The translations under genes and the position numbers were made by a program. Below are positions 15,101 through 51,013 of a stretch of 64,000 bases of DNA, piece by piece. Positions within the stretch are counted from its first letter, which is position 1. Every line of letters begins with the position of its first letter. The notes beneath the pieces are model-generated. The model had not been told where the DNA came from. It made no database searches and saw nothing but the letters and a program-made list of their open reading frames with translations. Origin of the DNA: Setoptus koraiensis (Eukaryota; Animalia; Arthropoda); the NCBI GenBank assembly GCA_048013815.1, contig CM106585.1, forward strand, positions 20,150,001 to 20,214,000. The letters run 5' to 3'.

Positions 15101-16369
15101 CCCATATTTGTGAAGCATCTTCAAATGAACAGCGAGATTATATTGGGCAAATTGCCGGGTGTGTCGGATAACTTTGAATCGACAAAACTTCGATCAACAG
15201 CTACCAGATTGGGGCTCCTAAATGGCATGCAGCCTACACATATTCAGCACCATTTGACTCGGTTGCCGCAGCACCAAATGAGTCACTCGATGCCGAGTCA
15301 TCATCAGACATTTTATCCGGCGTCAATATTTGATTTGACCCAACCAAATGTGCCAATCAGCCATCTACCATCGCCAGCGCAAGGAATGAAAGCCGAACAA
15401 TCGGGCCTAAATATTGCACCCGAGGCATACAATGGTGAATCGGAAATTTTCGAGTATTCGCCAAGTGTCTTCTCGCCCAATCAATTCATCACTGACTATG
15501 ATCCTAGTTTAGACGATGAAGAGAGCTCACCATCTATGGAACAACAGATGCACCACCAACAGCAACAGCAGCAGCATTCTCAACCTGTCCAATCGTCAAA
15601 TCAGAAGCATGCCATGAGATTCATGGATCCTGTTGGAATGATGTTATCTAAAGTGTCCATGCATCATCCCAACGGTCTCATGCAACATCGCCCATCGATG
15701 CTGTTGTCTAGCTCATCAATCAGACTGCCACGATATGCCAAGAAGCCAAATGCTACAAGTATATTTTCGCTTCATAGAGACAAGCAGGCAACGGCGGCCT
15801 CGACACCTATTGGTCACCAGCAGAGAGGCAGAACAAAGAAAACGCAACAAGATAGTAAGAAGTCGCACAAGGTAGAGGGCGAGGGTAAATCCAAACGGAA
15901 GAAGCGAATGAAAAGTTATATTGGCTTAGGCAAATCACAAAAGCAACAGAAACATCAACAGCAGCAGCTTATGCAACAACAGTTGGCGACATTGGGAGAT
16001 ATTGGTGACGACGAATCCATAGAGTCTATAGTGCATTTCGACTCGCAGTCAATGAAATCTCACCATTATCCGCCTGCTGATCCCATGCTAGACATGGCCT
16101 CATTTCAAAATCAGAAATTATTCACCAATAATCACCTCGAGCACAGTAATATGCTAGATCAGGGGCAACAAATAGCATTCGACGATGACAATATCAGCAA
16201 TAACAACAACCACGGCCAACAACAAGAGCTTATAACAACAGGCAAACAAACAAAGATATCGTTCTATCCAAACAGTAATGGTATGAAATCGTTCATAAAA
16301 GAGGCACCGTTCGGACAAAGATTGATCAATTCGGTTAAAGATTTTAAAAATAAATTCGTCTTACAATAA
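12146..16369 (+). CDS. 1407-aa low-complexity (Asn/Gln/His/Ser-rich) protein with DUF4779-like His/Lys-rich segment; probably secreted; true start may be downstream
   Basis: Single 4.2-kb ORF; DKGHKKHGWKNVYHKEEYANHQKYHD resembles the arthropod DUF4779 signature (GHKTKGFHNVYHKDEY); signal-peptide-like hydrophobic stretch at ~12509-12580. Confidence 0.8.
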   Translation: MKLNKIVKVYYIELTRSLLLLMMNNSNKFTNMKFSDLIKQSTNYRININAENKKKSKSSKTCQQYRRAFKSRESPLGKMPQQNAINTTRILSSPSSSEQPSLLVSPLHNEDSAKVCCCLGKVLCFSFVIIIIIFMNQNLFLGVQCLTTNQQFSPTNNNYSHLSITSMSKPKEEIDAKSIANSTIQPSSISGGGKSNRAEPDKFRLVYGFGPSSSSVISLTDMKSSQSTPTSNNQTEQSQTAAQKYLDKHKFGVRSHQTANNDTIVGSIITINDTNSIVSSSVSKFPVQFKPMDGTKEEPIKIESRRFFQSVLPPVGERNDNLVASSSNNHHHHHWHRHHRAANNNQWSPHKSSNGFSNQYRSNTKNQDQQDFYNNSNRSNQNSDYYRGQDMDATNSDTLAIGIVIPTPSRLQHPIVTSVMNVPPLSNKLFNHGAQNNVKSMMRDLQQAATNTDDRNKGNNKNHHHDKTNYSKKHVEGGGEHSDDGQTDKEAHGEHEHGHDNEKFWKKKNYGHDHEEGAGNKEAKDGGKWYKDKGHKKHGWKNVYHKEEYANHQKYHDIWRDKDWKNKKANEKIHYDHEKGKIHQSQQKKQYFDKDNHGSKYHHQNDNKWKVYNKDEAEKGDKKLESLTKLSQLDNGHHNNNGKNNDDDNEDDNDKTNSPITSSSNEDPGQLDEDELVIEKMAKQLSPSSSMPTNVMSNMLTITQPTSSTSNLVNVRHKPASSSSGNSNQVHNSINDILKTVQDDNNNYSKSSDDSSTDDGDSPNSAKDNGNAGQSNEEDSIEKVIPVVAPSTMDTNNNNSNKRPKPSSSPQASVPAPLATNTNTNTSTNKSANQSVISSENNQNKKKNDDSNIKLISVTAASKQQTNKPDQLVINTPMVVQSGSSEWNNKNNLTTATSNNHKNKTTTGTNQQQQQQLLNNNQQRPTFINPWPIHVAIGSPMLTSQPMRAYSDNNNHVAANSAKKQQITNGNALPANFNHLLPIQRPIFVKHLQMNSEIILGKLPGVSDNFESTKLRSTATRLGLLNGMQPTHIQHHLTRLPQHQMSHSMPSHHQTFYPASIFDLTQPNVPISHLPSPAQGMKAEQSGLNIAPEAYNGESEIFEYSPSVFSPNQFITDYDPSLDDEESSPSMEQQMHHQQQQQQHSQPVQSSNQKHAMRFMDPVGMMLSKVSMHHPNGLMQHRPSMLLSSSSIRLPRYAKKPNATSIFSLHRDKQATAASTPIGHQQRGRTKKTQQDSKKSHKVEGEGKSKRKKRMKSYIGLGKSQKQQKHQQQQLMQQQLATLGDIGDDESIESIVHFDSQSMKSHHYPPADPMLDMASFQNQKLFTNNHLEHSNMLDQGQQIAFDDDNISNNNNHGQQQELITTGKQTKISFYPNSNGMKSFIKEAPFGQRLINSVKDFKNKFVLQ

Positions 16370-18247: not shown

Positions 18248-20341
18248 CTAGGGGCGATTATTCTTGTAGGCTCTGATTCGCGTTGGTGGCTTCAGTTGCT
18301 TCAATGCCTCCTCTACTTTTTGATTGATTTCAATTGCATTGCTAGAGAGAGGAGCACAAAATACACTGGCGGCGTTAGTATTATTATTGCCAGTTATACC
18401 GTCAGATATACGCGCCGCATTTGTATCATTATCGGAACAGTTGTTCGTATTGTCGATCAAATTATTTCGTGTGTACAAAGAATAAATGCTATCGTTAAAA
18501 GGCATTTTTCTTCCTCTCTTTCTGTTGGTGTTGGTTTTAGGTTCTCTAAAGTTGTCATGTTTTTGTTGTTGCATCCGATGCATATTGGCCAAAAATGAGC
18601 TAGTTGATGTTAAAAACTTGGAAAAAAAAGTTTTCGGCAGGTGGTGATTAAATTCGGATGGTTTTTGGGTAAAAATCGCTGAGTTATCTTCGCTAGTTGT
18701 GGCTGCTGTTTCATTCGTAGATGTGCCTACAGCAGGAAAAACTTCAAAACAGTACTCAAATATAATCTTCTCTGGGCGATTTAGAGCTATATATAGTTCA
18801 CCAATTGTAATCGTCGAATTGTCATCTTTACTTGTCCAGCCTGCGGCCAACTTTTTTGGATCAATCATATGGGCAATTGAGACTACTTTATCGTTGCAAC
18901 TATTGGATACAGTTGGTGTTGACGTTGCTGCTTGTGATGTTGTCACTGAAGATATTTTAGGTTTTTTAAGGGGTGACAACGCTAGTCTGTCTCTGGAATT
19001 TTCAACAGGCTCAAAATTGCTAAGCCATTCGGAGAGCAACATATTTGCCGGTGGCATAGGTAGATCACATACAGGTTGATTGAAAGAGTTGGTTGGTCCT
19101 TGATTCTCGGATAATGAGGAACGCGAGTGATTAGATACTTCACTCCGCACTTGATTCATGCGTGCATGACTGATATGAGACATGGCATTGGAAGAGTGTA
19201 AAGACCTATCTTGTGTATCTTCATAAGCAGTTCGTGAACTTTCGCACCCCTCCATGGAAGCCACCATAGTCTGGAAAACGTTGAGTTGCTTCTCAAGCGG
19301 CTCATCAGAGGTGCTACTACGCTCTAATAAAATAGAGGCATCGGGTGTATTGAGAGTGGAGGAGGATGACTGTTTGGGCGCAGTGGTGTCTGTATTCTTT
19401 GGTCTTGATTCGTACATCTTCTTTTTGAAAGCATTCAAACTGAGATCCAGATGATTGTCCTGCACAACCCTTGTGATAGCCACTGAATTCAATTCGTGCG
19501 ATGGCGATGGCTTCAGTCTGAGTACTCGCACTGAAGGCTGTTTGTTTTGCTCTTCGATTTTATCGTGAGTCTGTGGTGCCGTTGTAGAAGAATCGTTCCC
19601 CGTATGGGGCACCAAAGAACTATTTTGTACATCAGATGATTGGTTCTGGTCAGTATTGTTGCTAGTAGGTGTTGGTGCAATCTTCAACCATCTATTAACA
19701 CTTTTCGAAAGTTTATTCGAGGATACTTTCCATTTGTTCTCCAAAAGATCAATTACGGGCGATAAGCGTCTCTGTAGCGATAGCCTAGCTGCAACGCGAG
19801 GATTCTGCGATAGAGACATTACTCGTAGCCAGTCAACGGTTGTGGCAGGATGGAATTCCACTATGACATCCTTGGGTAACTCGCTGGATGTTAATACTTT
19901 TAAAAACTTATCGTTGTCCGTACCCAATTGATTGATCTTCTTGAGAGCCTTACATGAAGGAGTCCTCAATCTGACGTTTTTGTTTCTGAATCTATATGTA
20001 GTGTATCCAGTGTGCACCAGATCGTCTAACAATTTCTTAGTTCTCTCATCAAATTTGAAACCAAATTTTTTCCAGATCTCACCGTAATTGATTAATAAAT
20101 ACAGCTCCTGCGTTACTTTCTCTATATCATTGGGCAGATTTATTAGTTGTGACAGTTTACCACAGAGCCTATTGTAAAAATTTCTGATTTGATCCCTGTT
20201 CCGTATCTGATCTGCCTTCCTGCCACAACGTTGTGCCATATAGTGCTGCATATTCTGGAAATCTTTCCCATATTCACCGATTGCCTCAAAGAACCATTTG
20301 ATATCATCATGAGTCAATGCGCGTGGCTTGATTGATGTCAT
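18248..20341 (-). CDS. CRAMP1: Cramped-like SANT protein (~697 aa from ATG at 20341; frame open to ~20405)
   Basis: DIKWFFEAIGEYGKDFQ..RNRDQIRNFYNR matches the cramped SANT region; LRTPSCKALKK, ELLINYGE-like YLLINYGE, QNPRV and GWT..ITIGELYIALNRPEKIIFEY match further cramped blocks. Confidence 0.88.
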   Translation of the reverse strand: MTSIKPRALTHDDIKWFFEAIGEYGKDFQNMQHYMAQRCGRKADQIRNRDQIRNFYNRLCGKLSQLINLPNDIEKVTQELYLLINYGEIWKKFGFKFDERTKKLLDDLVHTGYTTYRFRNKNVRLRTPSCKALKKINQLGTDNDKFLKVLTSSELPKDVIVEFHPATTVDWLRVMSLSQNPRVAARLSLQRRLSPVIDLLENKWKVSSNKLSKSVNRWLKIAPTPTSNNTDQNQSSDVQNSSLVPHTGNDSSTTAPQTHDKIEEQNKQPSVRVLRLKPSPSHELNSVAITRVVQDNHLDLSLNAFKKKMYESRPKNTDTTAPKQSSSSTLNTPDASILLERSSTSDEPLEKQLNVFQTMVASMEGCESSRTAYEDTQDRSLHSSNAMSHISHARMNQVRSEVSNHSRSSLSENQGPTNSFNQPVCDLPMPPANMLLSEWLSNFEPVENSRDRLALSPLKKPKISSVTTSQAATSTPTVSNSCNDKVVSIAHMIDPKKLAAGWTSKDDNSTITIGELYIALNRPEKIIFEYCFEVFPAVGTSTNETAATTSEDNSAIFTQKPSEFNHHLPKTFFSKFLTSTSSFLANMHRMQQQKHDNFREPKTNTNRKRGRKMPFNDSIYSLYTRNNLIDNTNNCSDNDTNAARISDGITGNNNTNAASVFCAPLSSNAIEINQKVEEALKQLKPPTRIRAYKNNRP

Positions 20342-20771
20342 GGGTACTACTGGGTCGTACACCTGTATTGGTCTCGCTTCAATGTCTATATTTACATATA
20401 TCCTGATTATATAATATGTCTATTTTGATATGATCCTAACCTTGATGCAATGATCAGAGATGTTGTGTAAAAAAGAGTGAGAGAAATTTCATGTTCATGG
20501 TAAGCTGAGATCAATAATAACAGTAGTGATTGGTACATGTTCCCAAATGATGGATCCATAGATGGCGTAGAGCAGCGCGCAGTTTAAACTGTTTTCCAGA
20601 GGGAAAAGACTAGACAAAACCGATGGGTTGAGCTGACCAGAGGGTAGAATACTACGTTCTGAATTTATTATAATTTTATTTAACTCTACAGTTGATTTCG
20701 TCATCGATTCTTGTTCTCAAATAAAACGGGATCTGATCTACGAACCGCGCCATGAGCAATATCATATTATA

Positions 20772-21620: not shown

Positions 21621-23309
21621 ATGGATACATTCTTGGAATTATTCAAGAATAGGGATCAATTCCATAAGCCCGGTGAAAATTACAAAACTGATGGATATGT
21701 TACAACACCAAATACTATGGCTTTACTTGCCAAGCACCTGGAAATTACTGGTGGCCAAGTGAGAACTCGTTTCCCGCCCGAACCAAATGGTATACTACAT
21801 ATTGGTCATGCCAAGGCCATAAATATAAATTTTGGTTTTGCCAAGGCTCACAATGGTATTTGTTTCTTGAGATTCGATGACACAAATCCAGAGAAAGAAC
21901 GTGACGAATTTGTCCACTCCATAGCGGAAATGGTCAAATGGCTTGGTTACGAACCATATAAAACAACCTATTCATCAGACTATTTTGATCAATTGCATGC
22001 TTACGCCGTGGACCTAATCAAACGAGGCCATGCCTACGTGTGCCACCAAAAGCCGCATGAATTGAAAGGCTTCAATCCACCACCCTCCCCTTACAGAAGC
22101 AGGCCAATCGAGGAAAGTTTGGAGTTGTTCGAGGACATGAGACTAGGTAAAATTGATGAAGGCCAGGCTTGTTTGCGAATGAAATTCACCATGGATGAAG
22201 GAAAACAAGATCCGGTGGCTTACAGGATCAAGTTCATGCCGCACCATCGAACCGGTAGCAAGTGGTGCATCTATCCCACATACGATTTCGCGCATTGTCT
22301 CTGCGATTCGCTAGAAAATATCACCCATTCCCTCTGCACGAAAGAGTTTCAAAATCGTCGTAGTGCTTATTATTGGCTGTGTAACGCATTAGATATATAT
22401 TGTCCAGTTCAGTGGGAATACTCAAGACTTAATATTAACTACACAGTAGTGTCAAAGCGCAAACTTGCGCAACTCATAGAGAATAAGATAGTCTCCAACT
22501 GGGATGATCCAAGACTTTTCACACTGGAGGCTCTTCGTAGGAGAGGGTTCCCATCAAAGGCCATCAATAATTTTTGTGCTAAGATGGGAGTGACTGGTGC
22601 CAACGCCACAGTGGATCCGACGATGATTGAGGCCGAAGTCCGTGACTTCCTCAATATCAGTGCACCACGAGCAATGGCAGTGCTAGAACCGATAAAGGTG
22701 AACTTGGTTAACTTCGAGGAAGTTTTTGGTGCGAAATCTCAAGTCATAGAAGTGCCTGACTTTCCGGCTGATCCAGAGAACAGTGTAAAGCATAAACTCA
22801 CAATTACGCCAGTCATATACATAGATCGCTCGGATTTCAAAAACATCTCCATTGTTGATAAAAACTTTCGCCGTTTAACTTGCTCCCAACCCGTTGGTTT
22901 GAGATATATACATCTGGTTATAACTGTAAAAGATGTTGTTCTTGATGCTAACTCAGAAGTAACGGAACTCAACGTGGTTTGTGAAAAAGCAGATCAAGCT
23001 ACAAAACCTAAGGCGTTCATACAATGGGTATCAGAAAGTCTCAATTGTCAAGTGCGTGTATATGAAAGGCTTTTCAAGCATCCAAATCCAGAGGATCAGC
23101 CCAACGGAATGTTGTCAGATTGCGCCGACAACTCTCTCCGCGTCTATAATGGAGCGTTGGTTGATTATTCTCTGGCCGAATTCAAGCCCTTCAATGTATA
23201 TCAATTTGAGAGAATAGGATATTTCTGCATCGATCCTGAGAGCTCTGCTAATAACCTCATACTCAACCAGACTGTAAGTCTAAAAGAGGATAAGGGTAAA
23301 AGCAATTAG
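21621..23309 (+). CDS. QARS1: Glutaminyl-tRNA synthetase, 562 aa, lacking the eukaryotic N-terminal domain
   Basis: [75 protein letters not shown]; in-frame TGA 21 nt upstream. Confidence 0.96.
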
Positions 23310-23466: not shown

Positions 23467-24363
23467 TCAAGCTTCTAAATCATACACGAATAACATTTCG
23501 GATTTTGATAAACCTGCATCCTCCAAAGATATTTCGCTATTCGGTTTTGTTGTTGAGTCTGAAAGTTTTGCGTAGTTCGTAGAGTTACTATTACAACTAA
23601 ATTGTGATAGAATAGAATTATCATCCTGCGTGGATGAAACGGGTGTTGTTGGCTCAGAGGACGATGGCGTGTTACTCAAAATAGATGACGAATTCGCCAT
23701 GCTAACTGGTATATTTCTTCCATTAGTTAATTGAGGCTCGTCTTCAAAATCATCTGGTAGTGGTGGGCGACCTGGCAATTCCCTTCTAGGAAAGTTAGTG
23801 GTAATCTGAAAATTTAGAGGAGCGTTGTGGTGGCCGAAAACGAACCAATATAGATATTTAACTGGATTGCTTTTATGAAACTTCCTAACTATTCTAGAAC
23901 CATCTGGTAGCTTTATGACGAGCCTGATAATATCATCGGTTGGCGTGTCGCTCATTGAAGGTTCTTTGGGAAGCCTATCTAGAATAGTCTTTTTCAATGT
24001 AAGTAATTTATTGCGTATCAATGCTTGTCTTTGTTCATTCTCTTTGCGCTCTCTTTCCTGGGCCTCACTCTGTCTGGCCTCCTCTAATCGTTTTCGTTCC
24101 TTCTCTCTATCGGCTTTCAATGACTGCTGATAGGCCTCATCCTGCTCTTGGCGTATCATATCACGCTCTTGTCTTTCGATTCTTGCTATCGTCTGATGAA
24201 TATCTTCGTCAGCTGCACTTGAGCCAGTTGTAGATCTATTGGTGGGTGGGTTAGATGCTGATGAGGATGATGAAGAATTTCTATAATACAAATAAGCCAA
24301 ACCGACACAAACAATTGTTATGAAAACGTTGAAAGGAGAAGATGTTATTGCGTCTAATATCAT
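23467..24363 (-). CDS. FAF2: FAF2/UBXD8-like UBX protein (N-terminal hydrophobic helix, coiled coil, UBX), 298 aa
   Basis: IRQEQDEAYQQSLKADREKERK, IKLPDGSRIVRKF, FQITTNFPRRELP, SLEDAGLSKSEMLFVYDL match the FAF2 C-terminal half; UBA and UAS domains not seen. Confidence 0.8.
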   Translation of the reverse strand: MILDAITSSPFNVFITIVCVGLAYLYYRNSSSSSSASNPPTNRSTTGSSAADEDIHQTIARIERQERDMIRQEQDEAYQQSLKADREKERKRLEEARQSEAQERERKENEQRQALIRNKLLTLKKTILDRLPKEPSMSDTPTDDIIRLVIKLPDGSRIVRKFHKSNPVKYLYWFVFGHHNAPLNFQITTNFPRRELPGRPPLPDDFEDEPQLTNGRNIPVSMANSSSILSNTPSSSEPTTPVSSTQDDNSILSQFSCNSNSTNYAKLSDSTTKPNSEISLEDAGLSKSEMLFVYDLEA

Positions 24364-26719: not shown

Positions 26720-27246
26720 TTGTAAGCCTCGAATCAAAGTACGGAGAGTATCTTTAATATTGGCCAAAAACTGTCTGATTTCCAGCGCACGCAAGCCTGA
26801 GTTAAATCAAATCGATCGTTGACAATCATTGTGGTTCATGCTAGATTTCTCGAAAGAACGAAGATCCGCAATTGTCTGTTAGCATTTGATAACATGTAGG
26901 TGGCGCTCATCTATTTCAGAAATTCTTATGAGAATCAGGTTTATCTCTGTGCCTCTGCATGTGGATTATAACTTGTCTATTGTGTGTTGCCTGAATCAAT
27001 TGATGACGAAGAAAGAAAAAGAAAAAGAAAACATTTAGGACGATTCACAAGCAGTAGATGATCGTAGAAAAGTGCTCGCAGCGCTCCCTTGAGAAACTTC
27101 CCGTAGTCAGACTACATAAAATCCGTCGTTTCACACTCATCGCATCTACACTCGCATCACAGTAAACAAAACAGAGCATTTACAATGCCTTTCGTCAACC
27201 TGAAATCATAATTATGTTCGGGTCTCTCCTTGAGGATCTTTATTAT
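26720..27246. repeat. Right arm of old degenerate inverted repeat (partner ~24484-25250)
   Basis: See partner; ends ~50 bp before the JARID2-like ATG. Confidence 0.85.
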
Positions 27247-27293
27247 TCAAAGCTCAAATAACTATTCCCCATCTACTTACTCAAATATCACTT

Positions 27294-28086
27294 ATGAGCC
27301 CGCCGGCCAATAGTGATCGTCTTCGTCCAAGACGGAGGGCTTCTCAGACACATGTAAGTCCGTTACGAATCGGGACGAAAAAATCATACAAAATATTGTA
27401 CTGTAAAATATCTCAATGTTAAAATTTAAATCTCTCCCTAAATATCTCAGTTTTTTAGGTACCAGCAGGCTGCTAACCCGTTGCGTGCCGAAGGAGAGGA
27501 TCTCAAAAAAGCCCTCATTGCCTCTCTTCAGGATGGCTCAAAAAAGAAGAAGGGGGGCATAACCGTCCAAGAAACTAACACTGCCACAACTACTAAAGCC
27601 AAAAGGTATGCTGCACTAAGAAAATTTGCATCCAATCAAACTAGGCCCACAGCAACAACAACCACTACAACAACGAGTCCCTCAAAAAACTGCCCACCTA
27701 ATCACACGCACGACAGAACACCCACAGAATATTTCCCTAAAACTTATAAGCCAGATACAGAGGATTTCTTGAATTTTCTCTGTGTCAGATTGCCACCGCC
27801 CAAGTTCGGCAATTTCGAATACAGCACCTTAGCGGCAGCCATTACAGCACATGCCAGAGGCGACTATCTCAACAGGCTCTCCAGCAAGATAACTAACGAC
27901 AACTTAAAGAAAGATATGAAATCGACCTCTCTAGCCGATGAGATGAATAATTTAAATGAGGTTTCTAAAGGTGAACTAGCTGTGGATAAATATTTAATCA
28001 AAGGTCTCATGACTAGCGAATTTGCTGGTGCATTCGCCGATGAAGAAACTTTGTTCGATCTGGTAACAACCAACGGTACAAAGTAA
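27294..28086 (+). CDS. JARID2: JARID2 N-terminal (PRC2-binding) region only; exons 27294-27353 and 27451-28086, ~231 aa
   Basis: Exon 1 ends CAT|GTAAGT; acceptor TCTCAG at 27450 keeps frame. EGEDLKKALIASLQD (UIM), KRYAALRKFASNQ (human RLQAQRK116FAQSQ), KPDTEDFLNFLCVR (human KPKTEDFLTFLCLR). Exon-1 model is less certain than the main ORF. Confidence 0.8.
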
Positions 28087-28380
28087 CAATAGAAGCTGGA
28101 TCTTCCATAAAGAAACTCAGGATTCTTGTATTTTTTGGTAAAACTCTCTTTCAAAGTCAACTTCAATGATTTAACATCAATTTGTAACGTTTGTATCCTA
28201 GACTATGGCCACAACAACATTGTCCATACATATCTAGAAAATTTAGTATCTCAAACAATGTAATGATATAAACATGTCCGTATTTATGAGTTTGTATATA
28301 GTTTGCGCTTTTCCCGGTTATCTTTAGACTCATTTCTGCTTTCGGTAAAGACTGTTGGAATACAGTAGATCTTAGTTTAA

Positions 28381-29616
28381 TTAAGGTTTGTAATTGAATG
28401 GGGTTCCCAATCTGTTATGCTCATGCTGGTCATAATAAGTTATACCTCTGATCTTAGACTCGAGGGGATTGAGATATACATCAGTATACAATTCTTCAAC
28501 TCCAATCTCCGGATCAGATTTGGCTTGGGTAGTGGCCACATCTACTTCCTTTCTGACTTCATTCTCAATATCCTTGAGTTCCTCTGCTGTTGCAAGAGAC
28601 GATTTTATCAATTTATCTTTGAAGGACGTAATGGGGTCTCTGAGTTGCCTAACTTCTTGAATTTCGTCTCTTGTTCTGTAGCTAGTTCCAGGATCTGACA
28701 TAGAATGACCAAAATAACGATAAGTGGCCATCTCCATCACGAGAGGACCTTTTCCCTGTCTACAATAGTCTGCCGCCCACTTGGTGGCCTCACGGACAGC
28801 CAATACGTCCATACCGTCTACCCAGATACCTGGTATGTAGTCTCCTCTAGTAAAGTAATCCGTGCTTGCGGCAGCTCTCTCAGCGCTGGTTCCCATACCG
28901 AACCCATTGTTTTCACAAACGAATATAGCAGGTAGATTCCACAATTTGGCCATATTGAAAACCTCAAAGATTTGCCCTTGATTCGCTGCACCATCACCAA
29001 AGAGCGATATGCATACATCGTCCCTATTAGCGTATTTGAGACCAAGAGCGATACCGGCACCAACTGGTACTTGCGCACCAACAATACCATTACCACCTGA
29101 GAAAATGGATGGATCAAGATTAGTATGAGTTTAAACTTAAATATTAAACAGCTATAATCAGATCTTCAAAGTTCCAAACATACCATATAATCCTGGCCCA
29201 TATAGATGCATAGATCCACCCTTGCCTCTTGTAGTACCTGTGGACCTTCCCGTGAGTTCTGACAGGATCTGTCTAACAGTGGAGCCTCTTACGTAAGCCC
29301 AGCCGTGGACTCTGTAAGCTGTGATGATTTCGTCTGTCTTACGGATGGCACTCTCCATACCGACAGCCACTGCCTCTTGGCCAGCATATAGATGACAAAA
29401 ACCTCTGATAATCTTTTCTTTGTAAAGGCTGTTAGCCGAGGCCTCCAAGCGCCTGATGGTCACCATTTGTTGAAAAATTTTAAGGCCTTCATCCCTGGTG
29501 ACCGTGACCTCTGTTGCCGGTCCTTGTACACCCTCAAGTTTGTGCAATTTGAATGGTTTGCAACTCTGAGTAGCCGAGGAGCAGAGTCCTCGCGATATAT
29601 TTCTGAGTGTGATCAT
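28381..29616 (-). CDS. PDHA1: Pyruvate dehydrogenase E1 alpha, 2 exons (29616-29184, 29096-28381), 382 aa
   Basis: [24 protein letters not shown]|[10 protein letters not shown] across an 87-nt phase-1 GT-AG intron, [26 protein letters not shown]. Confidence 0.97.
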
Positions 29617-30371
29617 GGTGGATAAATTGTGAGATATTTGTTATGGTTCTACAGATAAATGAATAGACAAGATCCCGAATAGTCTAAGCTAATTGAAAAA
29701 CAAAAGAAGATTGTGTAGGTCGGACCAGATATGAACTTATGTCAGGATATTGAGTGAGATACATTTACACGTAAATGTGTGTAGTATTACATAACGCATG
29801 CGCTCGTGTCGCAATACAAAAGGTGAGCGCTCACTTTGAATACAGTAGTTGCTATTTGTGTATCATGTGTTCATTGCACGCATGTGCACTTTCGTTTTCA
29901 TGTTATCACGGTGCTACAATAAAGTGCGTGTAATGTTTTAGTGCTGAAATATACTCGAGAGGGCGCTTCTGAACTCATGGACTGGTGACATGACTACGGA
30001 AAAAACAGCTAAGCAACACGAAGGCGTCGTCTGGTGGACAATTTTCGAGACATTTACCGTGCAACATCTTGTCGAGGCGGGTGCACTTGAATTTTTTACG
30101 GCGCGCTCTTTTGCACATCTGCGTTCGCTCAATAGTTCGGCACAAACAAACAAATCAACAACAATAACACGAGTTTTCGCCACGTTTCGGGCCCCAAATT
30201 AGATTGGTTCCATCGATGTATTATTAGTAATATAATTCAAATGATTCTGATTGTTCGTAAAATTGTATAATTTATTTATCCATTGCATCCATTATTACTG
30301 TTCACATGAACAAAAGAATCCCCTAATGTTGTCTATATATCACTTACAACGAGTTAGACATAGGCCATCAA
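29617..30371. promoter_or_regulatory. Probable divergent promoter region between PDHA1 and NDST
   Basis: Head-to-head genes 755 bp apart; no specific element identified. Confidence 0.4.
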
Positions 30372-33300
30372 ATGATTAGATTAAGCCTGTTAAATATAGT
30401 CATCAAACCAAAAAAGTTTCACCTACTACTGATATTATCCGTTTGGTGTTTTATTGTTATCCTACTAGCCATCAATAGCAACAGAAAGACAGAGCTACTG
30501 CAGCGGTCAGCGATCGATCTTCCAATATCAAGTCAGACCAATGGCGACATCGATGACGACAAACGATTGTCCGCCTCGAACTCTGCTCAGGTGGTCAAAA
30601 AAACACATGATAATAATAATCAGAACCCGTCGGAGGAGGCCTTAGACAAACAACCGAAGAGTGTTGTGAACAACGAGAAGAAAAATGTAGCCCAAGCCAT
30701 CTTTCCAATGTTTGCACCCGTCAATCCAAACCGTCCGTCCCTCAATTCTAATTTTTATCCATCGCAGTCATCATCCTCGTTTGACCCTCTCAATGTGATG
30801 AGGGGCCGAAGATCTAGTAGCGCATCTTCCTCTGCTAATTTTCACAATATGATTGATCGTCTCAACATGAGAGTATTGATATTAATCATAGTAAACGAAG
30901 AAAAGAGCAACTCGATAGAGCAAAGAAACAGCAACAACAATAATCTACATATTAGTCGTAACGTAAAACTAATTATTGACACTTTAGAATCAGATCATAT
31001 AGATTTCACCATAGATAGCACCCGTAATGGTATGCCAAATTCCTTATTGGCCAGTCATTCATCTATTGATGGACATGACAAGGCCGGCCTTCAATATCCT
31101 GTGATAATCATTGACGATCTCCTGAAATACGCCACACTTAATAGATGGCTCAAGGATCAATTAGATCGACACTGCCGAACGCATAACATAGGCATTATTG
31201 CTTTCTTTGATTTCAAAAATCCACCAAATAGTCGTTGGCAACACAGTGACAAGTCTTCCACATTAATTGAGGGATTTCCACTTTACTACAGGCGAGTATC
31301 TGAGTTACAATTGCATGACTATCGTCTCAACAGCAGATCAGCTATACCTAGAATACTAAAAACAAACCCCGACTTGGTGATGCAAGGTTGTGTCTCGCCA
31401 AATATAGACCACTCGCCGTGGTTTGCAATGTTCAGTGATCATCCAACTTATGAATCTGTTAGTTATGCTCGACTGGTGGCCAAAACAACTAGAGATAGAC
31501 AATCAGCAACTAGTAATTTTACAAGCAAACGAAAGAGAACAGATTCATTATCTAGAGCAAAAAGTAATAAGTATAGTCATGGTGATACAATCAAAAGACG
31601 CCAATCTAAAAGAGCCGCTACCACCCACAAGACCAGATACATCAATTTAGATTACTCTAGAGAATCCAATGAGATAGAAATATCCAACAATAGTTCAGCT
31701 ACTTTATCAAATACCAACGATATATATAGTGGAAATGTGATGGTTGATTTAGCGACCTTGGTCATGGCTGATCATGGGCTGTACGATGGTATTAGGCGTG
31801 TGATATTTGGTGGTGGCATTAATTTCTGGTATCACAGAGCTCTACTACTAGATGCTGTAGGTCATCTGTCAAATGGAAAAATCATATCTAGTCTAGATAG
31901 ATATATACAAATCGACATAGATGATATATTTGTTGGCGAGGTGGGCACCCGAATGAAATTGGATGATGTTGAGGAGCTGATTGAGGCACAGCGTCAGTTT
32001 GGCCTAGTGATCGATGGTGGCTTCAAGTTCAATTTGGGCTACTCGGGAAAATATTTTCTTCGTGGCGATGAGCTAGAGGACGAGGGCGACAGGCTACTAA
32101 TCAAATCAGCTAATGAATTCAATTGGTTTTGTCATTCGTGGAGCCACAGCAAGGCTCATCTGAGCGACGATTCTAGTCGCATCGAGCGAGAATTGATGCT
32201 AAATCAACAATTTGGCAAGAGATACAATTTGCCCATAATACAAATCAACAACAGCAACGAGGAAGAATCGCTTCATGCGTCGTCTGGCTTCCGCTATCAC
32301 CACCAGCCTTCAAACAGATTGGGGACACCAACGAGACTAGAGCAAGCATTAGCACAAAATTATGATTCGACTCACGAATCTGATGAGTATATCGAGACTG
32401 GTAATGGCAAAAAAGTGAATGAATTAGGTAGCGATGCCGAAACTTCTAGCTCACAGTTCACCTCTAGTTCAGTGAAGTCAATCATATTGAGTGATTTGGC
32501 TCATTATGGTGGCGATTATTCACCATCAATCGATGTTGACACTGCCAGCCAACAACATTCAAACAAATCGATGCCCAAAATTACTGGCACTAGCAATAAT
32601 AGTAATGATAGGAAGATAAACACCATGGTTGACCTGTCACAGCAGCAGAGACAACATGAAAAGAAACAGCAAAAAGAAGCGATCCGTCCGAGCGGAACTT
32701 ATTCGGTTGCTCCACATCATTCTGGAGGTGAGTAAATCTACTGTCGCAGACATAATCAAATTCTATCTACCGCTTTATGTTTGCGATGCATCCGCAACAT
32801 AGTTTGAATTGTGGGCGTCTAGGGTGTCGGAACTAACGGTTTTATTTAGGTTTATAGGCGTGTAATAGCAGTATTTATTTTATCGATCACGCTTGGCGTA
32901 GATTATCGCACAATTTTAATCATTCATAACTGTTTTCCATGTAGCTGTTTCGTTGGAACTGCCACAAATAATACAACACACATATTGGTACAGATAATAG
33001 AATTGGACTTTGAATCTCTTGACGTTGCCAAGTCATCAACCAGAATGCTGCTGACTGGTTGTTGTTGATCGTTTGTTTGTTTGTTGTTGTCTAGAGACCA
33101 TCAACAATAGTGTGTCCTATTCCTATGACTAGTGCTGGCCAAGATGATTTAAAAGAAATAAAGTAGACGATCCAGTGTATTATTGTCACCCTGTTGCCTG
33201 ATCTAGTTATATCCATTAGTGACACACGGACACATTTACAAAATGATTGATGAGAATGTGCGTTGTTTCACGTAGTCGCATCGCGTTCACAGTTAGTTAT

Positions 33301-36300
33301 CAACAACCGACATCACAATGGGTACGATAATGATTTCGGCCTACAGACACATTTATTACGATAAATGTTGCCCGATAAATATATCCCAAGTTGTCCATCG
33401 AATCATGATCGATGACTTAATGATTGAGGCCCTAACAATATTTGAGGCTGCCTAATGTGCAATCTGCGAGCTACCAGTCAGAGAGTGAGAGAGTGGCCCA
33501 GTGAAACAAACCTATTCCTTTGGCCCCGGATAATGCGTTGGCAGTGGGCCGATCATGCAGTCAACAAACTGTACGTCAAATGGCAAGTTATTATTTTCGA
33601 CTCGAACCGACAATGGAACAATCGTGCAAAACTGTATCTCGAATGTAGAGCCTCGAATAATAGGTGAGTGACCGGAGCAAACAGCAAGACCGACGAGTGC
33701 GTATCATGTGACCCATCATTGCTAGCTACGCGCCCAACGGAAGATTGACTTCGGTGACTTGATGCAAGAATAATCGCTGACTTTTTTTCGCTGATTTCCT
33801 ACGCCAATTCCGAGTCTTTTATCATGATAATACTTGCTCTTGCACTACACTAGAGAGTACAAGATGCAAAGGCGAGATGAGTGACGACAATTCAACTATT
33901 GTTGTCATTTTGTATTATGTATTTATTCATGTGCAAATGTTGAGGCTTAGCAAGATTATTCATGTATGAATATTAGGCCCTAGTGACAATTTTTAGTTCT
34001 TTGCGTCGCCTAAATTAGCACCGACCACTCATGCTAGACTTCTTTTCACCGCCACTCACACTAATTTTGTTATTTTAGACTCGGGTTTTATACTTGGCTT
34101 TAGTCGCTTGCTAATCTTGTTTATTTGGTTTGATCTAAATTTTAGATAGCAACACTTGGCGGCAAAAGAAGTAGCGCGCGAAATGACTAACTCTACAACT
34201 AATCATCATCAACTATATAATATCATACACATTTATACATATAGACGCATCGTGTTTAAATCACGTGCGAACTGCTCCGTTCACCCACTTTGTTATTATA
34301 TTAGCCACCAGGCAAATTGCACAACGGGCTGGCCGCATGTACACCAAATGCAAAAGTTCATTAATGTGGATATAGCACCAGAGAGCGAGGGGGCAAAAAG
34401 TCAACTAAACTGTATCATTGGCACCCACCGTCACAGTTATTATCACCCAGCGACATATAGAGAGTGAAAGAGAGAGAGCGGCGCCATCAGCGCCTGGTTA
34501 CCGACAGCAACAAAAGTGGGTCATTTGTTTAAACTATCGGAACTAACTAACGCTGCCATGATAATGGCTCTGCTGGCGGGTCGGCAGACACTAAAGTTAA
34601 GAGTGAAATAGCTCATTTGAATGTAATTACCATCACGTTTCAGCTATATAGACCTCAAGCAAGCTCACTAACGAATATAGTGACCTGTCTATCTTGTCCT
34701 TGGACCTATAATTAGAGGGATCAGTGGATGGGTGAAAATATTCTCTATCTCTATTCAGACACACATTGGTATATATATATATATATATATATACCAAATA
34801 GGCATATGTATAGATATAGGTATAGGCTAATGGCCGCCCGATGCAACTAGAGCGAGACACTGCAAGCTGGAATTGTCCAACTGACAGTTCGCGTCTTGTC
34901 ATTCGGTTTGAAAGTAGCTTGCCAGCAGTTTATAAGTTTATAACGAGCGGCGATCGAATCGCCTCTAGCTAGCCAGTTATTTTATTTTATCAATCTAAAG
35001 TGGCCAGCCAGCCAGTGAGCTAGCGTCTGACAGATGATTGGAGTGTTTGTTTTCCCAGCGTTGTAAGAGGCCCCTCGCTCCCATCGCAAGCCTGCTAAAT
35101 TCAGATACATAGTGCAGAGTGCCACAGAGAGTTATACAATAACTTTAATGTAACTGGCTGGCGGCGGCGGGTGTGTTCACCATCGTGCAATATTACTATC
35201 ACTGGCACTACTTGTAGTCTGTTTGTTTGTTTGTTAATTTATTTGCACTTTCACTTCCTATTAGATGGAGGGCCATTCAGCGGCCGGATCTGATCGGCGA
35301 CTCGATTCTGTTCGAATAGCTCGACTGGCTGGCTGGTCGACTTTGCTGACTAACCACTTGCAACTTTGTGTACAACTTTGCCGATTTTACTTCCCTTAGC
35401 ATAACGGGCCAAATAGATGAACGAGTTGAATGTGGCGCCGCATAGCATTTATTCCAATTCAACCCAGTAGAAAGGAAGAGGAAATTGACTTTGACTGAAC
35501 GGACCCCAAACTTGGCCAAAGTACCGACTGGTTTTGGGCTCAAACATTGTTTGCTTTCAGGCTTTCAGGCTTTCAGGCTCTCTGGCTCCCTGGGCCCCCG
35601 GGCCTCCGGCTGGTGCTCTGGTGGCGGGCTGACCGTAGCTTAGTGACGGGCGACCCTCGGGACGCTGACAGGCTCAAAGAAACCGCTGAGTTGGCCGGTG
35701 CTGCAGAGCCAGCTATTTGGCGTCAGTTGATTCAATCAAATAACTTGGTGGCGTGACAGAGACGAATATGAGACGAAACAGCGCCAACGTGTTTATCATA
35801 TGCCATTACATAATAGCACACACACACACATTAGTCGACTGAATTGGCCCACCATAAATCGTTTGTTTGTTTAGCCGGTCAATCCAGTGTGTTGGTGGCT
35901 GTCTAATCTTTGCAATTGTCCTAGAGGGGGCCCAGAGAATAATAGATTGAATCCATCTAAATTCTTCAATGCCAATTACTGGACGCCTCTGTTTGTCGGC
36001 TCAACCTAATTGACAGCCAACAGCGACGCTGGCGGACACAGCCAGTACCTATTATTATTATCCATTGCTCACTGTGTTTGAGTTAATATCCGACCAACCA
36101 ACAACATCGACAACATCATTGCATGTCGGCTGTTACAATAATACAACACGCGCTGTGACAACTACTGCGCGATAGAGATATCGACACAAGAGTCGCAAGA
36201 GATTAGTATGCAAATGGCCCACGTTTATGCATACGTTCTTGGGCATGAGCAAGCGGCCATCCGACTGGCAACGGGCCGGCCAAATGCAATATCGCAATGT

Positions 36301-39300
36301 CGCATAGCAGATTTGCGGGTGGCTAGATCGACACGGTGCGGTGGTTGCGACAAACAAACAAGTGAACTGAATCGCACGGACACTGAACAACAGCGACAAC
36401 AACTCCGTGGCGACGAGTAACAAGCTCTCTCACCTCCTCAATCTTTGGGCCTGGCGCGAATCGCATTGACAACAGCACACAAAGTCTTAATGTTGCCCCC
36501 CCCCCACGCTACACTGACTGATTTGCTCTGACACCAACTTTAAATGGCTCGCCAAACTGTCGCTATGTCCCCGAGACCATCGAGATTGTCAAGTGTGATA
36601 AGCGAGCGAGAGAGCGAACCATTTGCGAGTTGCGAGCAGCGCATAGGGTCGCTCGCTAACGGCGCGCTTACATGGGCGCCGGCTGATCGGTTGTCGTCGG
36701 CATTCGTAGGTGATGGTATTGATAAAATACTGGCCTGTTTCGTTCGTAAATAATATTGTCAGCGAGGCTCTTATTTTTGCACTATTGTCGTCTTGTTCTG
36801 GCCGCCACGAAACGACACTTTGCACCGCGCAGTTATATCTATATTATTGATCTTGGTGCTTACGGTCAAATGATTTTATATTTGCACTGCTCTTGAGCTG
36901 GCAATTTTGCGCAAACATTCGCCTCTGTTTCGCGAGCGACTCGAAGCTACTTGAGGCCGGTCGGACCGAAACGGAGCGGGACAATTCAGTGTTCACATAG
37001 ACTCTTTTGCGGGGCGACTGCCTGCGCGAAATGCCAAGATAAGACTGCTGATTATTAATAGGCGCCAATGTTTTTGCTCTATTTATCACCTTGCGATGGA
37101 GAGCGGGGGCACCCACTTGAGACGTTCGGCAAGAACGCATTGTAAATCAAGCAAGCCATTAGCGCGCCGCTCACTTTAAATTGAAACAACTTTCCCAACA
37201 AGCCGCTGACAGCCGCTGCAAGCCATTGCATTAGCCAGACTGCATTTAGCCGGTTTTGGCTGGTTTTAGCTGGCTTTGGCTGGGGCCGCGTCGAGCTGAT
37301 GATTGCACCGGCAGCTGACTTGGGCCAGTCCAATATTGGATTGTTTTTGTTCGTTTCCAGTCATTTTGTCCCAATGTCCGACGGTAATTGGGAGCCATAA
37401 TCCGACGCGTGCTGCCGTGACACACTGTTACTATTGTTTCTTGCTACCTCTGCCGCTAATTCAATTCTTATCCGTTGAAAGCGAGAACGTTCGACGGATA
37501 TAGCAATGAGAGCCATTCTATAGTGAGAGAGTTAGCTGACAACCGCGTTGCAACATTGCCAAAAAACAGACACTGGCCAAGAGCGTAAACAGATAAAATT
37601 GTCAAAAAGAGGGCACCTAGATTGCTGGCGAAAAGCATTCGCTTGCACCTCCATGGTTTTATGGCTAACTGAATTACTTACCCGACAAGCATCTTTTAAC
37701 CTGTCTCTCTCTCTATATATATATATATAACTGTTCTGTATTTGTCCGCTTTTTAGTATTTCCCATTCACGAGCCGCTGTACGAGGCCTGGAGAAAAGTG
37801 CTCAATGTGCAAGTGACCACCACAGAGGAATATCCACATTTGAGGCCGGCCAAATTGAGAAGGGGCTTCATTTACAAGGACATAATGGTGAGTTTCAACA
37901 CATGGGGGGTGCCGGCAACACGGCACATATATCAGCAAACATATAGCGGCAAACATATAGCACCAAACATATAACACCAAACATACAGCGCAACGGGGAA
38001 CGGAAATCAATTTGGGTCGGGCGTCCGCCCGGCAGCGCCGCGGCTCCGCCAGTCGACCCGTTGTCTGTTGGCGGCTCTAATTGTGGCTAGACACGACACT
38101 GTATCTGTCTAGACAAACAAAGAGCCTGTTAGTCGCTATCGACAGAGCCAATCAACAAATGGTGCCTTATGATTGATAGTGTTGCACACAATGGCGGCCG
38201 CAACAACCGCACAAACAGCGCCAACTACAACAACAGATATCGTGGCCGACGGAACGCAGTATCGAGTCACATGTCACAACGGTCACCAATAAATATCTCA
38301 CTCACACAATGTGAGATCGACGCCCAAAAATGACAACGAATTCAACACAAACACACATTATGCACGCTCGTATTGCGCAAGCCGCCAGTGTCCAGTTGTG
38401 TCCGATCGAGCCGGTTGGAGCAGGTTGTTTGCTGTTGTTGCTGTTGTTGCTGTATTTATCAAACGGTCAAAACTAGATCACGCGCTATGAGCAACAACGT
38501 GCCGGTCGAATCGCTACAATCACAGATAAACTAATGTTATCGGCGCCATGATGCCACAACTACCATTGCCGAGCACACCTACAAACAAAAGATAAATCGC
38601 GATTATTCCGTGTGCGACAATTCTACATCGGTCGTTGTTGTTAATGATGAGGTTTCACACAACCACAGATGACGACTGCAGATAAGATGGCCACATTGTT
38701 GTTACGGCGGATCTTTGCTGTTGTTCACCTTTGTCACTCGTTCTCGTCGCAACACGGTCACAATGGCTTGTGGTCAGCAACAGATAATGCGGGCCCCAGT
38801 CGCAGCGAATGGCCCAAACAAACAGCATCATTGGCACTAATGTTGTTATCATCGTTGTTTTTGTCGCTATCCACTATCACTAACATGACAACAAAACAAA
38901 CACACAATCTAGGTGCTGCCCAGACAAACTTGCGGACTTTACACCCACACCATATTCATGGATAAATATCCTGGCGGCAAACAAAAGTTGGACGCCAGCA
39001 TTCAAGGGGGCGAACTATTTCAGACAATTCTGCACAATCCAGTGAGTATTCTGCCTTTTATTTTCTTATTTCTACTTTTGTTTCTGGCGACGCAAAATAA
39101 ACGCGCGTGACAGACCAAGCAAAACTAAAAATGCTCAAAACCTAACTTTGTTTCGTTCCGCCGTATCTCTCGCCCCAATCAATTATAGGTGAGCGTATTC
39201 ATGACGCATCTCTCAAATTATGGCAACGATCGTTTGGCTTTGTACACCTTTTCGTCGCTGATAAATTTCATAATGAAATGGACAAATATCAATCTGAGAT

Positions 39301-47101: not shown

Positions 47102-47210
47102 TGGCGCGACCTGGCGACTGGCGGCGTTCGCGAGTCGCGACCTAGCGACTGGCGCGACTCGGGCGACCTAGCGACTGGCGCGACCTAGCGACTCGGGCGA
47201 CCTAGCGACA
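47102..47210. repeat. Degenerate GCGACCTAGCGACT tandem array
   Basis: Repeated gcgacctagcgact(g/c)g units. Confidence 0.8.

Positions 47211-50941: not shown

Positions 50942-50943
<2 letters not shown>

Positions 50944-51013
<70 letters not shown>
50944..51013. repeat. (CA)~35 microsatellite
   Basis: Directly visible. Confidence 0.95.

What the first reader, a model, noticed from the sequence alone, without database searches (positions are those of the whole stretch)
27294..28086. Mini-JARID2: a ~231-aa stand-alone PRC2-recruitment/activation module with no JmjN/ARID/JmjC
Seen: a short ORF carrying, in the right order, a strong UIM (EGEDLKKALIASLQD), an RKFA motif and KPDTEDFLNFLCVR, then a stop at 28086; PDHA1 is convergent 294 bp away and no JmjC/ARID-like ORF occurs on the + strand in the remaining 36 kb. 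Established: in human JARID2 (~1250 aa) these three elements bind H2AK119ub, carry K116 (methylated by PRC2, allosterically activating EED) and bind SUZ12. Inference: this lineage either reduced JARID2 to its PRC2-stimulating core or split it into two genes, giving a natural minimal PRC2.2 accessory subunit.
Basis: partly seen in the sequence, partly recalled or inferred. Interest (0 to 1): 0.85.

Follow-up and report, generated by a model that had tools for sequence, protein, structure and literature searches.

The report
Stand-alone mini-JARID2 gene in a mite
This small, expressed and strongly conserved gene encodes only the front part of the Polycomb cofactor JARID2, the part that docks onto and switches on the gene-silencing enzyme PRC2, and it has short-only relatives in at least 35 related genomes, which makes it a natural test of what the missing Jumonji/ARID part is for.

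Summary
A two-exon gene (27294-27353 and 27451-28086, + strand) encodes 231 aa. RNA-derived contigs of two runs confirm the GT..AG intron and run unspliced through the stop codon.

A profile of the protein and 20 relatives hits only JARID2 in the PDB (nine best chains, E = 3e-8). The match runs in order from the ubiquitin-interaction motif to the SUZ12-binding helix. The window's protein also carries an ALRKFAS motif like human K116/F117.

No JmjN, ARID or JmjC domain was found in the protein or in the downstream ORFs of 95-100 aa or more on either strand.

New here:
- The protein belongs to a family of at least 36 clusters, 280-706 aa, found only in unannotated assemblies.
- In all seven other gene neighbourhoods that I examined, nothing Jumonji-like follows the gene.
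- A close relative keeps the intron position and the stop codon, with dN/dS = 0.05.
- Only 9 of 34 members keep the RKF motif.

PRC2 binding is inferred, not shown. I could not search the rest of the genome, so loss, fission and an extra paralogue remain open. The host is probably an eriophyoid mite (inferred). The scan had not noted this on other DNA.

The parts
27168..27293 (+). 5' leader of the transcript, with two short upstream ORFs (ATG at 27185, 8 codons; ATG at 27214, 15 codons)
   Evidence: The X4 contig starts at 27168 with adaptor letters before it. The uORFs were read from the sequence.
27294..27353 (+). Exon 1 coding part, 20 codons (MSPPANSDRLRPRRRASQTH)
   Evidence: It is identical at the protein level in the close relative L006.
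27354..27450 (+). Intron, 97 nt, GT..AG, phase 0. It interrupts the conserved N-terminal motif.
   Evidence: The joint 27353>27451 is present in contigs of runs X4 and X5. In L006 the intron has diverged with indels while both exons stay in frame.
27451..28086 (+). Exon 2 coding part, 211 codons plus TAA (28084-28086)
   Evidence: The stop codon is at the same place in L006, and the last seven codons differ only by two synonymous changes.
27324..27465 (+). N-terminal basic motif RPRRRASQTHFFRYQ (aa 11-25; the coordinates include the intron). It contains an RRRAS (R-R-x-S) site.
   Evidence: It is nearly invariant across the family (RPRRRASQTYFFKYQ). Its resemblance to the extreme N-terminus of human JARID2 is recalled from memory and was not tested.
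27487..27534 (+). Ubiquitin-interaction motif AEGEDLKKALIASLQD (aa 33-48), predicted to be a helix
   Evidence: It fits the UIM core (hydrophobic-x-x-A-hydrophobic-x-x-S). The family profile aligns it to the human JARID2 UIM from residue 25. AF2 predicts a helix with block-mean pLDDT of 73-79. A, A, S and L are invariant in the family.
27604..27639 (+). RYAALRKFASNQ (aa 72-83). K78 with the aromatic F79 at +1 is the counterpart of human JARID2 K116/F117.
   Evidence: phmmer aligns it to the human AQRKFAQS. The motif is present in only 9 of 34 family members, in three lineages. The importance of K116 and F117 is described in 10.1101/2020.05.28.122556.
27730..27801 (+). YFPKTYKPDTEDFLNFLCVRLPPP (aa 114-137), the counterpart of the SUZ12-binding (TR) helix of JARID2
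   Evidence: It aligns to the human KPKTEDFLTFLCLRGSP. The profile also hits the 31-residue JARID2 peptide chain 9c8u_E at E = 5e-5. P, T, F, L, F, C and R are invariant in the family. AF2 predicts a helix with block-mean pLDDT of 74.
27874..27963 (+). Degenerate copy of two family motifs (RRPTRQSPRLASS-RKISE and YEEDMKRASIALEDMAQEI), here RLSSKITND...LKKDMKSTSLADEMNNLNEV
   Evidence: Alignments A1 and A4. All seven amino-acid differences from L006 fall in aa 161-192.
27985..28065 (+). Clade-specific C-terminal module DKYLIKGLMTSEFAGAFADEETLFDLV (aa 199-225)
   Evidence: G, L, E, F, A, F, A, D, E and F are invariant in the family, and the module sits at the very C-terminus in all full-length members. 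The profile of the C-terminal half shows no similarity to JARID2 or to any other PDB chain.
28087..28380 (.). 294-bp spacer shared by the 3' ends of the two convergent genes
   Evidence: RNA contigs run through it without a break. One TATAAA lies at 28267.
28381..29716 (-). Convergent neighbour PDHA1 (pyruvate dehydrogenase E1 alpha), which sets the downstream limit of the gene
   Evidence: Pfam E1_dh, E = 2e-65 and 3e-24. Its intron 29095-29181 is spliced out in the same contigs.

Best explanation
This is a complete, expressed, two-exon gene for a 231-aa, mostly disordered protein. The protein is homologous to the N-terminal PRC2-interacting region of JARID2 and has no JmjN, ARID, JmjC or zinc-finger part. 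It belongs to a clade-wide family of short-only proteins (231-706 aa), probably of eriophyoid mites. Most likely mechanism, inferred from human and mouse JARID2: it is a string of short docking motifs that works as a PRC2.2-type cofactor. The helix at aa 117-134 would clamp onto SUZ12/Su(z)12. The UIM at aa 33-48 would bind the ubiquitin on H2AK119ub1 nucleosomes and so bring PRC2 to PRC1-marked chromatin. K78, with F79 at +1, would be methylated by E(z)/EZH2 and then occupy the aromatic cage of EED/Esc, which activates the enzyme allosterically. The invariant C-terminal module is a lineage-specific addition of unknown partner. I suggest, at low confidence, that it replaces a chromatin- or partner-binding role of the lost C-terminal domains. 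Shown here: gene structure, expression, purifying selection, homology to the JARID2 N-terminus, absence of Jumonji/ARID domains in the protein and in the window, and the family with its shared C-terminus. Inferred: every binding step and the link to PRC2. Open: whether the Jumonji/ARID half was lost, lives on as a separate gene, or persists in a second, canonical JARID2 gene.
For: Gene structure and expression: spliced contigs of X4 and X5 show the 27353>27451 joint and read on unspliced through the stop codon. Homology: PDB searches return only JARID2, with E = 0.0036 for the single sequence and E = 3.1e-8 for the family profile, which aligns in order from the UIM to the SUZ12-binding helix. 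Selection: the orthologue in the syntenic locus L006 (87% nucleotide identity) has 224 of 231 identical residues, dS = 0.288, dN = 0.014 and dN/dS = 0.049. Its intron has diverged with indels, and its stop codon and the tail after the putative donor are conserved with synonymous changes only. Family: 21 hits among 1.84 billion representatives and 32 in the word-index search are all 706 aa or shorter. Apart from one 60-aa gene-call fragment and two outliers, all end in the same motif. Neighbourhoods: in seven other gene neighbourhoods (six loci plus a gene table without DNA), the next genes downstream are DNA polymerase epsilon B, ATP synthase delta, an unknown membrane protein (in three) and PDHA1 (one contig ends at the gene), never JmjN, ARID or JmjC. 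No Jumonji or ARID Pfam domain occurs in the protein, the family, or the window's larger ORFs downstream. AF2 gives a disordered chain with confident helices only at the UIM and the SUZ12-binding helix. Literature: the mouse Jarid2 N-terminus alone restores PRC2 recruitment, and this needs the UIM (PMC5133711). K116me2/3 with the +1 aromatic residue binds EED and activates PRC2 (10.1101/2020.05.28.122556).
Against: No experiment or complex model links this protein to PRC2. I could not confirm that E(z), Su(z)12, Esc and AEBP2/Jing exist in this genome. Pfam's UIM model is not significant on the family (best E = 0.17, in 1 of 21 members). Only 9 of 34 relatives keep the RKF motif, so EED activation cannot be the conserved core function of the family. 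The best-conserved parts of the family, the N-terminal basic motif and the C-terminal module, have no assigned JARID2 function, and the C-terminal half has no detectable counterpart in human JARID2. The RNA evidence comes from unstranded assembled contigs, which drop rare isoforms. The rest of the genome could not be searched for a canonical JARID2.
Confidence: 0.7

Rival explanations
1. It is an extra paralogue. A canonical full-length JARID2 (with JmjN, ARID and JmjC) exists elsewhere in the genome, and this is a duplicated, truncated copy. It would act as a second PRC2.2 cofactor, or as a competitor that occupies SUZ12 without supplying the C-terminal functions.
For: It is not excluded, because no tool here searches the whole genome. 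In vertebrates, truncated JARID2 forms do coexist with the full-length protein (PMC6356158 and PMC9020659).
Against: The search of 1.84 billion representatives, which has no length limit, found no long protein sharing the strongly conserved N-terminal block. All 21 hits were 706 aa or shorter. That library holds at least 21 diverged short-only members of the clade, so a long member would probably have been sampled too. This is suggestive only, since a diverged canonical N-terminus could fall below E = 0.001.
Confidence: 0.15
2. It arose by gene fission. The Jumonji/ARID half survives as a separate gene elsewhere, and the two products may or may not still work together.
For: An unchecked note from this scan reports a 'catalytically dead JmjC-only protein' of about 300 aa, 162 kb beyond the window on the same chromosome (s1-330904). 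JARID2's JmjC domain is naturally inactive.
Against: That note assigns the JmjC to the KDM2/KDM7 type, not the JARID type, and I could not read the sequence. None of the seven other gene neighbourhoods that I examined has a Jumonji or ARID gene beside the short gene. The short proteins have their own conserved C-terminal module, which is not similar to JmjN.
Confidence: 0.2
3. These are the first exons of a longer canonical gene whose downstream exons were missed.
For: Eukaryotic genes can span other genes.
Against: The contigs of two runs read straight through 28062 and the stop codon. The seven codons after the putative donor and the TAA are conserved in L006, with synonymous changes only. 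All full-length relatives stop 4-6 residues after the same motif. The next gene is convergent, 294 bp away. The following + strand gene is NDST, and no Jumonji or ARID domain occurs in the larger downstream ORFs.
Confidence: 0.03
4. It is a convergent mimic. On this reading an unrelated disordered protein evolved JARID2-like short motifs independently, as PALI1 did in vertebrates.
For: The similarity is confined to short linear motifs in a disordered chain. Convergence on the K-aromatic EED-binding motif is documented for PALI1.
Against: Three motifs (the UIM, the K-F motif and the SUZ12-binding helix) occur in the same order as in JARID2, and a fourth possible one is the N-terminal basic motif. 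The SUZ12-binding helix shares 11 of 14 residues with the human one. The profile E-value is 3e-8, and nothing but JARID2 scores above noise.
Confidence: 0.05
5. It is a JARID2-derived protein that no longer works with PRC2, for example a general reader of ubiquitylated chromatin or an adaptor built around the C-terminal module.
For: The most conserved blocks are the N-terminal basic motif, the UIM and the C-terminal module. The PRC2-activating lysine motif has been lost in most lineages.
Against: The SUZ12-binding helix, whose only known role is PRC2 binding, has seven invariant positions across all 34 aligned sequences.
Confidence: 0.1

Closest known systems
JARID2 / Jumonji (human 1246 aa; Drosophila Jarid2), the PRC2.2 accessory subunit
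   Same: It has an N-terminal UIM, an R-K-F motif matching K116/F117 and the SUZ12-binding helix KPxTEDFLxFLCxR, in the same order in a disordered chain. In mouse cells the N-terminal region alone restores PRC2 recruitment to H2AK119ub1 chromatin (PMC5133711).
   Different: It has no JmjN, ARID, JmjC or C5HC2 zinc finger. It is 231 aa rather than about 1250-2350. It carries a clade-specific C-terminal module with no counterpart in human JARID2. It is a separate gene, not an isoform.
Truncated JARID2 isoforms: delta-N JARID2 of human keratinocytes (PMC6356158) and the C- or N-terminally truncated jarid2 transcripts of reptiles (PMC9020659)
   Same: They show that the PRC2-binding N-terminus and the Jumonji/ARID body of JARID2 can exist as separate molecules.
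   Different: Those are products of a full-length gene, made by cleavage, an alternative start or intron retention. The described delta-N forms are the opposite half, since they lack the PRC2-binding part. Here the N-terminal half is the entire germline gene, and it is fixed across a whole clade.
PALI1 (LCOR isoform), the PRC2.1 accessory subunit
   Same: It is a disordered accessory protein whose methylated lysine, with a +1 aromatic residue, binds EED and activates PRC2.
   Different: PALI1 is vertebrate-specific, unrelated to JARID2 and part of PRC2.1. It has neither the UIM nor the JARID2-type SUZ12-binding helix.

Membership tests
JARID2 (Jumonji, AT-rich interactive domain 2) orthologue group | SUZ12-binding (TR) helix, human residues about 140-166 | tested here: met
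   KPDTEDFLNFLCVR aligns to KPKTEDFLTFLCLR. The family profile hits the isolated JARID2 peptide chain 9c8u_E at E = 5e-5.
JARID2 (Jumonji, AT-rich interactive domain 2) orthologue group | N-terminal ubiquitin-interaction motif that reads H2AK119ub1 | tested here: met
   The profile aligns the family's EEEDLKLALLASLQQ block (window: EGEDLKKALIASLQD) to human residues 25-40. It fits the UIM core pattern and AF2 predicts a helix. Ubiquitin binding itself was not tested.
JARID2 (Jumonji, AT-rich interactive domain 2) orthologue group | PRC2-methylated lysine with a +1 aromatic residue (K116/F117) | tested here: met
   The window has ALRKFAS (K78, F79), aligned to the human AQRKFAQS. Across the family it is met in only 9 of 34 members.
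JARID2 (Jumonji, AT-rich interactive domain 2) orthologue group | JmjN, ARID, JmjC and C5HC2 zinc-finger domains | tested here: not met
   There is no Pfam hit in the protein or in any of the 21 family members scanned. There is none in the downstream ORFs of the window either. By the domain definition it is therefore not a Jumonji/ARID protein, only a homologue of the JARID2 N-terminal region.
JARID2 (Jumonji, AT-rich interactive domain 2) orthologue group | It is the only JARID2-derived gene in the genome (orthology rather than paralogy) | not testable with these tools
   No tool searches the whole genome of this organism. Scan notes give only unchecked leads.
PRC2.2 accessory subunit (functional class) | Physical association with E(z)/EZH2-Su(z)12-Esc/EED and stimulation of H3K27 methylation | not testable with these tools
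   This is inferred from the motifs only.
UIM (Pfam PF02809) | Significant match to the Pfam UIM model | tested here: inconclusive
   The best E-value is 0.17, in 1 of 21 members. The model is very short, and the sequence fits the published consensus by eye.

The most novel reading that the evidence does not exclude
Eriophyoid mites have discarded the whole Jumonji/ARID body of JARID2 (loss, not fission) and run PRC2.2 with a cofactor of 231-706 aa made only of docking motifs plus a new C-terminal module. Most lineages have even dropped the EED-activating lysine. If the scan's unchecked notes on ARID1, ARID2 and ARID4 homologues without ARID domains hold, this would be part of a genome-wide purge of ARID DNA-binding domains from chromatin regulators during extreme genome streamlining.
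Probability: 0.35. Interest if true: 0.78.

Novelty: new variant of a known kind. Interest (0 to 1): 0.62.

Why it matters
What the inactive JmjC, the ARID and the zinc-finger part of JARID2 contribute has been unclear. Cell-based work shows that the N-terminus is enough for PRC2 recruitment. A whole animal clade that keeps only the N-terminal motifs, under strong purifying selection, is a natural deletion experiment. It defines the minimal set of elements that evolution retains: the UIM, the SUZ12-binding helix and the N-terminal basic motif. It shows that the K116-type lysine is dispensable in many lineages. It also points to a new conserved C-terminal module whose partner can be sought. The 231-aa protein is a convenient minimal reagent for structural and biochemical work on PRC2.2. 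In addition, the family is absent from the named protein records that the searches reached, so it is probably unannotated in eriophyoid genomes.

Tried and rejected
- Pfam scans of the protein and the family gave nothing significant.
- ESM Atlas searches with the whole protein and with P0015:80-440 gave only low-scoring UIM-bearing or disordered proteins and no JARID2 cluster.
- I tried to obtain a canonical JARID2 sequence as a session id, to search for the Jumonji half, and failed. The word-index search with the family alignment returned only short family members. The search restricted to the SUZ12-binding helix of P0011 had 7 candidates, and all 6 reported were family members.
- The scan of metagenome contigs found 4 loci, all carrying the short form and several seen before.
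- The profile of the C-terminal half against the PDB found nothing, so I dropped the idea that the C-terminal motif is a remnant of JmjN.
- Raw RNA-seq runs X7 and X10, which carry the same species label as X4, laid no reads on the stretch. That label is probably the host plant, so these runs are no test.
- The text and 200 supplementary files of the Aculops genome paper do not mention Polycomb, Jumonji or ARID. The Floracarus preprint does not either.
- I asked whether the 1407-aa ORF upstream in the window and the 1435-aa ORF upstream in L003 are related. They are not.
- An Atlas search with the GlnRS gene did not resolve the taxon.
- Scan notes could not be read beyond the window's coordinates.

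Full report
**What is in the sequence**

The + strand carries an ATG at 27294. Twenty codons follow, then GTAAGT. A long ORF follows that ends in TAA at 28084-28086.

Assembled contigs of two runs (X4, X5) skip 27354-27450 (GT..AG). They then read without any further joint from 27451 to 29094, through the stop codon, the 294-bp spacer and into the convergent gene. That gene's own intron (29095-29181) is also spliced out. The contigs are therefore RNA-derived.

The X4 contig starts at 27168 with adaptor letters in front, so the 5' end lies near there. Two raw RNA runs with the same species label (X7, X10) laid no reads at all. The label is probably that of a host, so those runs are no test.

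**The neighbours**

The neighbourhood is compact and intron-poor:
- GlnRS at 21621-23309 (+)
- a UBX protein at 23467-24363 (-)
- PDHA1 at 28381-29716 (-, E1_dh), convergent on the gene
- NDST, whose deacetylase part starts at 30372 (+) and whose sulfotransferase part is at 39555-40241

Among the 37 + strand ORFs of 95 aa or more between 34 and 64 kb, the only Pfam hit is that sulfotransferase. The 28 - strand ORFs of 100 aa or more between 39 and 64 kb gave no hit.

**Is it JARID2-like beyond chance?**

- phmmer of the exon-2 product against all PDB chains returns JARID2 as its seven best hits (best E = 0.0036). Query residues 40-114 align to human residues 101-168, that is ALRKFAS to AQRKFAQS and KPDTEDFLNFLCVR to KPKTEDFLTFLCLR.
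- A profile of the protein with 20 relatives raises this to E = 3.1e-8. The nine best hits are all JARID2. The alignment now starts at the human UIM (residue 25) and runs in order to the SUZ12-binding helix. The isolated 31-residue JARID2 peptide chain is hit at E = 5e-5, and the next non-JARID2 chain is at E = 0.19.
- Pfam finds nothing in the protein or the family, in particular no JmjN, ARID, JmjC or zinc finger.
- AlphaFold2 with the family alignment gives a disordered chain (mean pLDDT 55). Confident helices appear only at the UIM and the SUZ12-binding helix. That is the expected picture for a string of docking motifs.

HMMER against 1.84 billion representatives, with no length limit, found 21 relatives. 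All but a 60-aa gene-call fragment are 280-706 aa. The word-index search with the alignment found 32. All come from Logan, JGI or ENA assemblies, and none carries an informative name or an NCBI or UniRef record.

The members share six blocks:
- RPRRRASQTYFFKYQ
- the UIM
- in some members, YSALRKF(A/P)SN
- KYKPETEDFLTFICFR
- RRPTRQSPRLASS-RKISE followed by YEEDMKRASIALEDMAQEI
- HLVKGLMTREFAGAFADEETIFESISNHKL, a near-invariant block that lies at the very C-terminus of every full-length member

The window's protein is the shortest and most divergent member, and its fifth block is degenerate.

The C-terminal half has no detectable similarity to human JARID2, to JmjN or to any other PDB chain. It is a clade-specific module, not a remnant that I can assign.

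On a quick tree, the RKF motif occurs in 9 of 34 members, in three lineages: the window, P0002 and a clade of seven. Because the motif matches the human one, an ancestral motif lost several times is the simplest reading.

**Stand-alone status in other genomes**

I examined seven other gene neighbourhoods: six loci (two of them are the same gene on different contigs) and one gene table without DNA.
- The next genes downstream are DNA polymerase epsilon subunit B (-), ATP synthase delta (-), a conserved membrane protein (three neighbourhoods; 51% identity between L003 and L005, no Pfam hit) and PDHA1 (-).
- One contig ends at the gene.
- None has a Jumonji or ARID gene.
- In L005, PDHA1 sits upstream and divergent, so the linkage is old but has been rearranged.

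**Selection**

L006 comes from a close relative and is syntenic with the window (short gene, PDHA1, NDST), at 87% nucleotide identity.
- Both exons align without indels.
- The intron is at the same place but has 26-nt and 4-nt insertions.
- The TAA is in the same position.
- 224 of the 231 residues are identical, with dS = 0.288, dN = 0.014 and dN/dS = 0.049. All seven replacements lie in aa 161-192.

**How it most likely works**

In mouse cells the Jarid2 N-terminal region alone restores PRC2 recruitment to H2AK119ub1 chromatin, and this needs the UIM (PMC5133711). K116me2/3 together with F117 binds the EED cage and activates PRC2 (10.1101/2020.05.28.122556).

By homology, I propose three steps:
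- aa 117-134 dock on Su(z)12;
- aa 33-48 read H2A ubiquitin;
- K78/F79 is methylated and activates Esc/EED.

All three steps are inferred. The family-wide pattern keeps the UIM and the SUZ12-binding helix invariant, while the lysine motif is often lost. This suggests that recruitment and complex definition, rather than allosteric activation, are the conserved job. The role of the C-terminal module is unknown. I suggest, at low confidence, that it supplies a chromatin or partner contact that the lost domains once provided.

**What stays open**

I could not search the rest of the genome, and I could not obtain a canonical JARID2 as a query. Loss, fission and an additional paralogue are therefore not separated.

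Unchecked scan notes give three kinds of lead:
- a 'dead JmjC-only' gene 162 kb downstream;
- ARID1, ARID2 and ARID4 homologues said to lack their ARID domains;
- a UTX said to lack an iron ligand.

The host taxon is inferred to be an eriophyoid mite. The scan has notes on two large pieces of the genome, one longer than 20 Mb. The genes are mostly intronless. The transcripts turn up in runs labelled as another organism. This matches published eriophyoid genomes with two chromosomes and more than 80% intronless genes (PMC11920263, PMC11879100). It was not tested directly.

**Verdict**

I found no description of such a gene in the papers searched. The nearest known forms are truncated isoforms of the full-length gene (PMC6356158, PMC9020659).

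Noticed in passing
window 30372-40241 (+): The NDST gene is split. Its deacetylase domains lie in one 787-aa ORF (30372-32735) and its sulfotransferase domain in an ORF at 39555-40241. The roughly 6.8 kb between them has almost no long ORF, which is an unusually long gap for this intron-poor neighbourhood.
   Followed up: partly
window 44000-64000: GC content jumps from about 40% to 52-58%. The region is full of overlapping ORFs of 75-330 aa on both strands, and none of those of 95-100 aa or more has a Pfam hit. The gene-dense, single-exon pattern of 4-33 kb stops here. This is unexplained.
   Followed up: partly
window 27185-27261: The 5' leader of the mini-JARID2 transcript has two short upstream ORFs (8 and 15 codons). 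In the relative L006 the second one lacks its stop codon and runs on to overlap the main ATG.
   Followed up: partly
window 28087-28380 and L006: The 294-bp spacer between the convergent mini-JARID2 and PDHA1 genes is covered without a break by RNA contigs and is well conserved in the relative. This suggests overlapping or abutting 3' UTRs.
   Followed up: no
L003:12187-13140 and L005:9426-10415: In two other species a conserved protein of 317-329 aa lies directly downstream of the short JARID2-like gene on the same strand. The two copies are 51% identical, have a hydrophobic membrane-like segment and have no Pfam family.
   Followed up: partly
L005:4699-6015: PDHA1 is also next to the short JARID2-like gene in this distant relative, but upstream and divergent instead of downstream and convergent. 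The linkage is ancient and a local inversion has occurred.
   Followed up: no
window 12146-16369 (+) and 18248-20362 (-): Two long single-exon ORFs (1407 aa and 704 aa) have no significant Pfam domain. The 704-aa one has only a weak Myb-like hit (E = 0.005).
   Followed up: partly
same genome, outside the window (scan notes s1-321343, s1-321409, s1-359807): First-stage notes say that the ARID1/osa, ARID4 and ARID2/BAP170 homologues of this genome all lack their ARID domains. Together with an ARID-less JARID2, this would be a genome-wide pattern. None of these notes was checked.
   Followed up: no
runs X4-X6 versus X7-X15: Transcripts of this locus occur at 99% identity in three runs labelled with organism C. 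Two deep RNA runs with the same label contain none. The label is probably a host on which this animal lives.
   Followed up: partly
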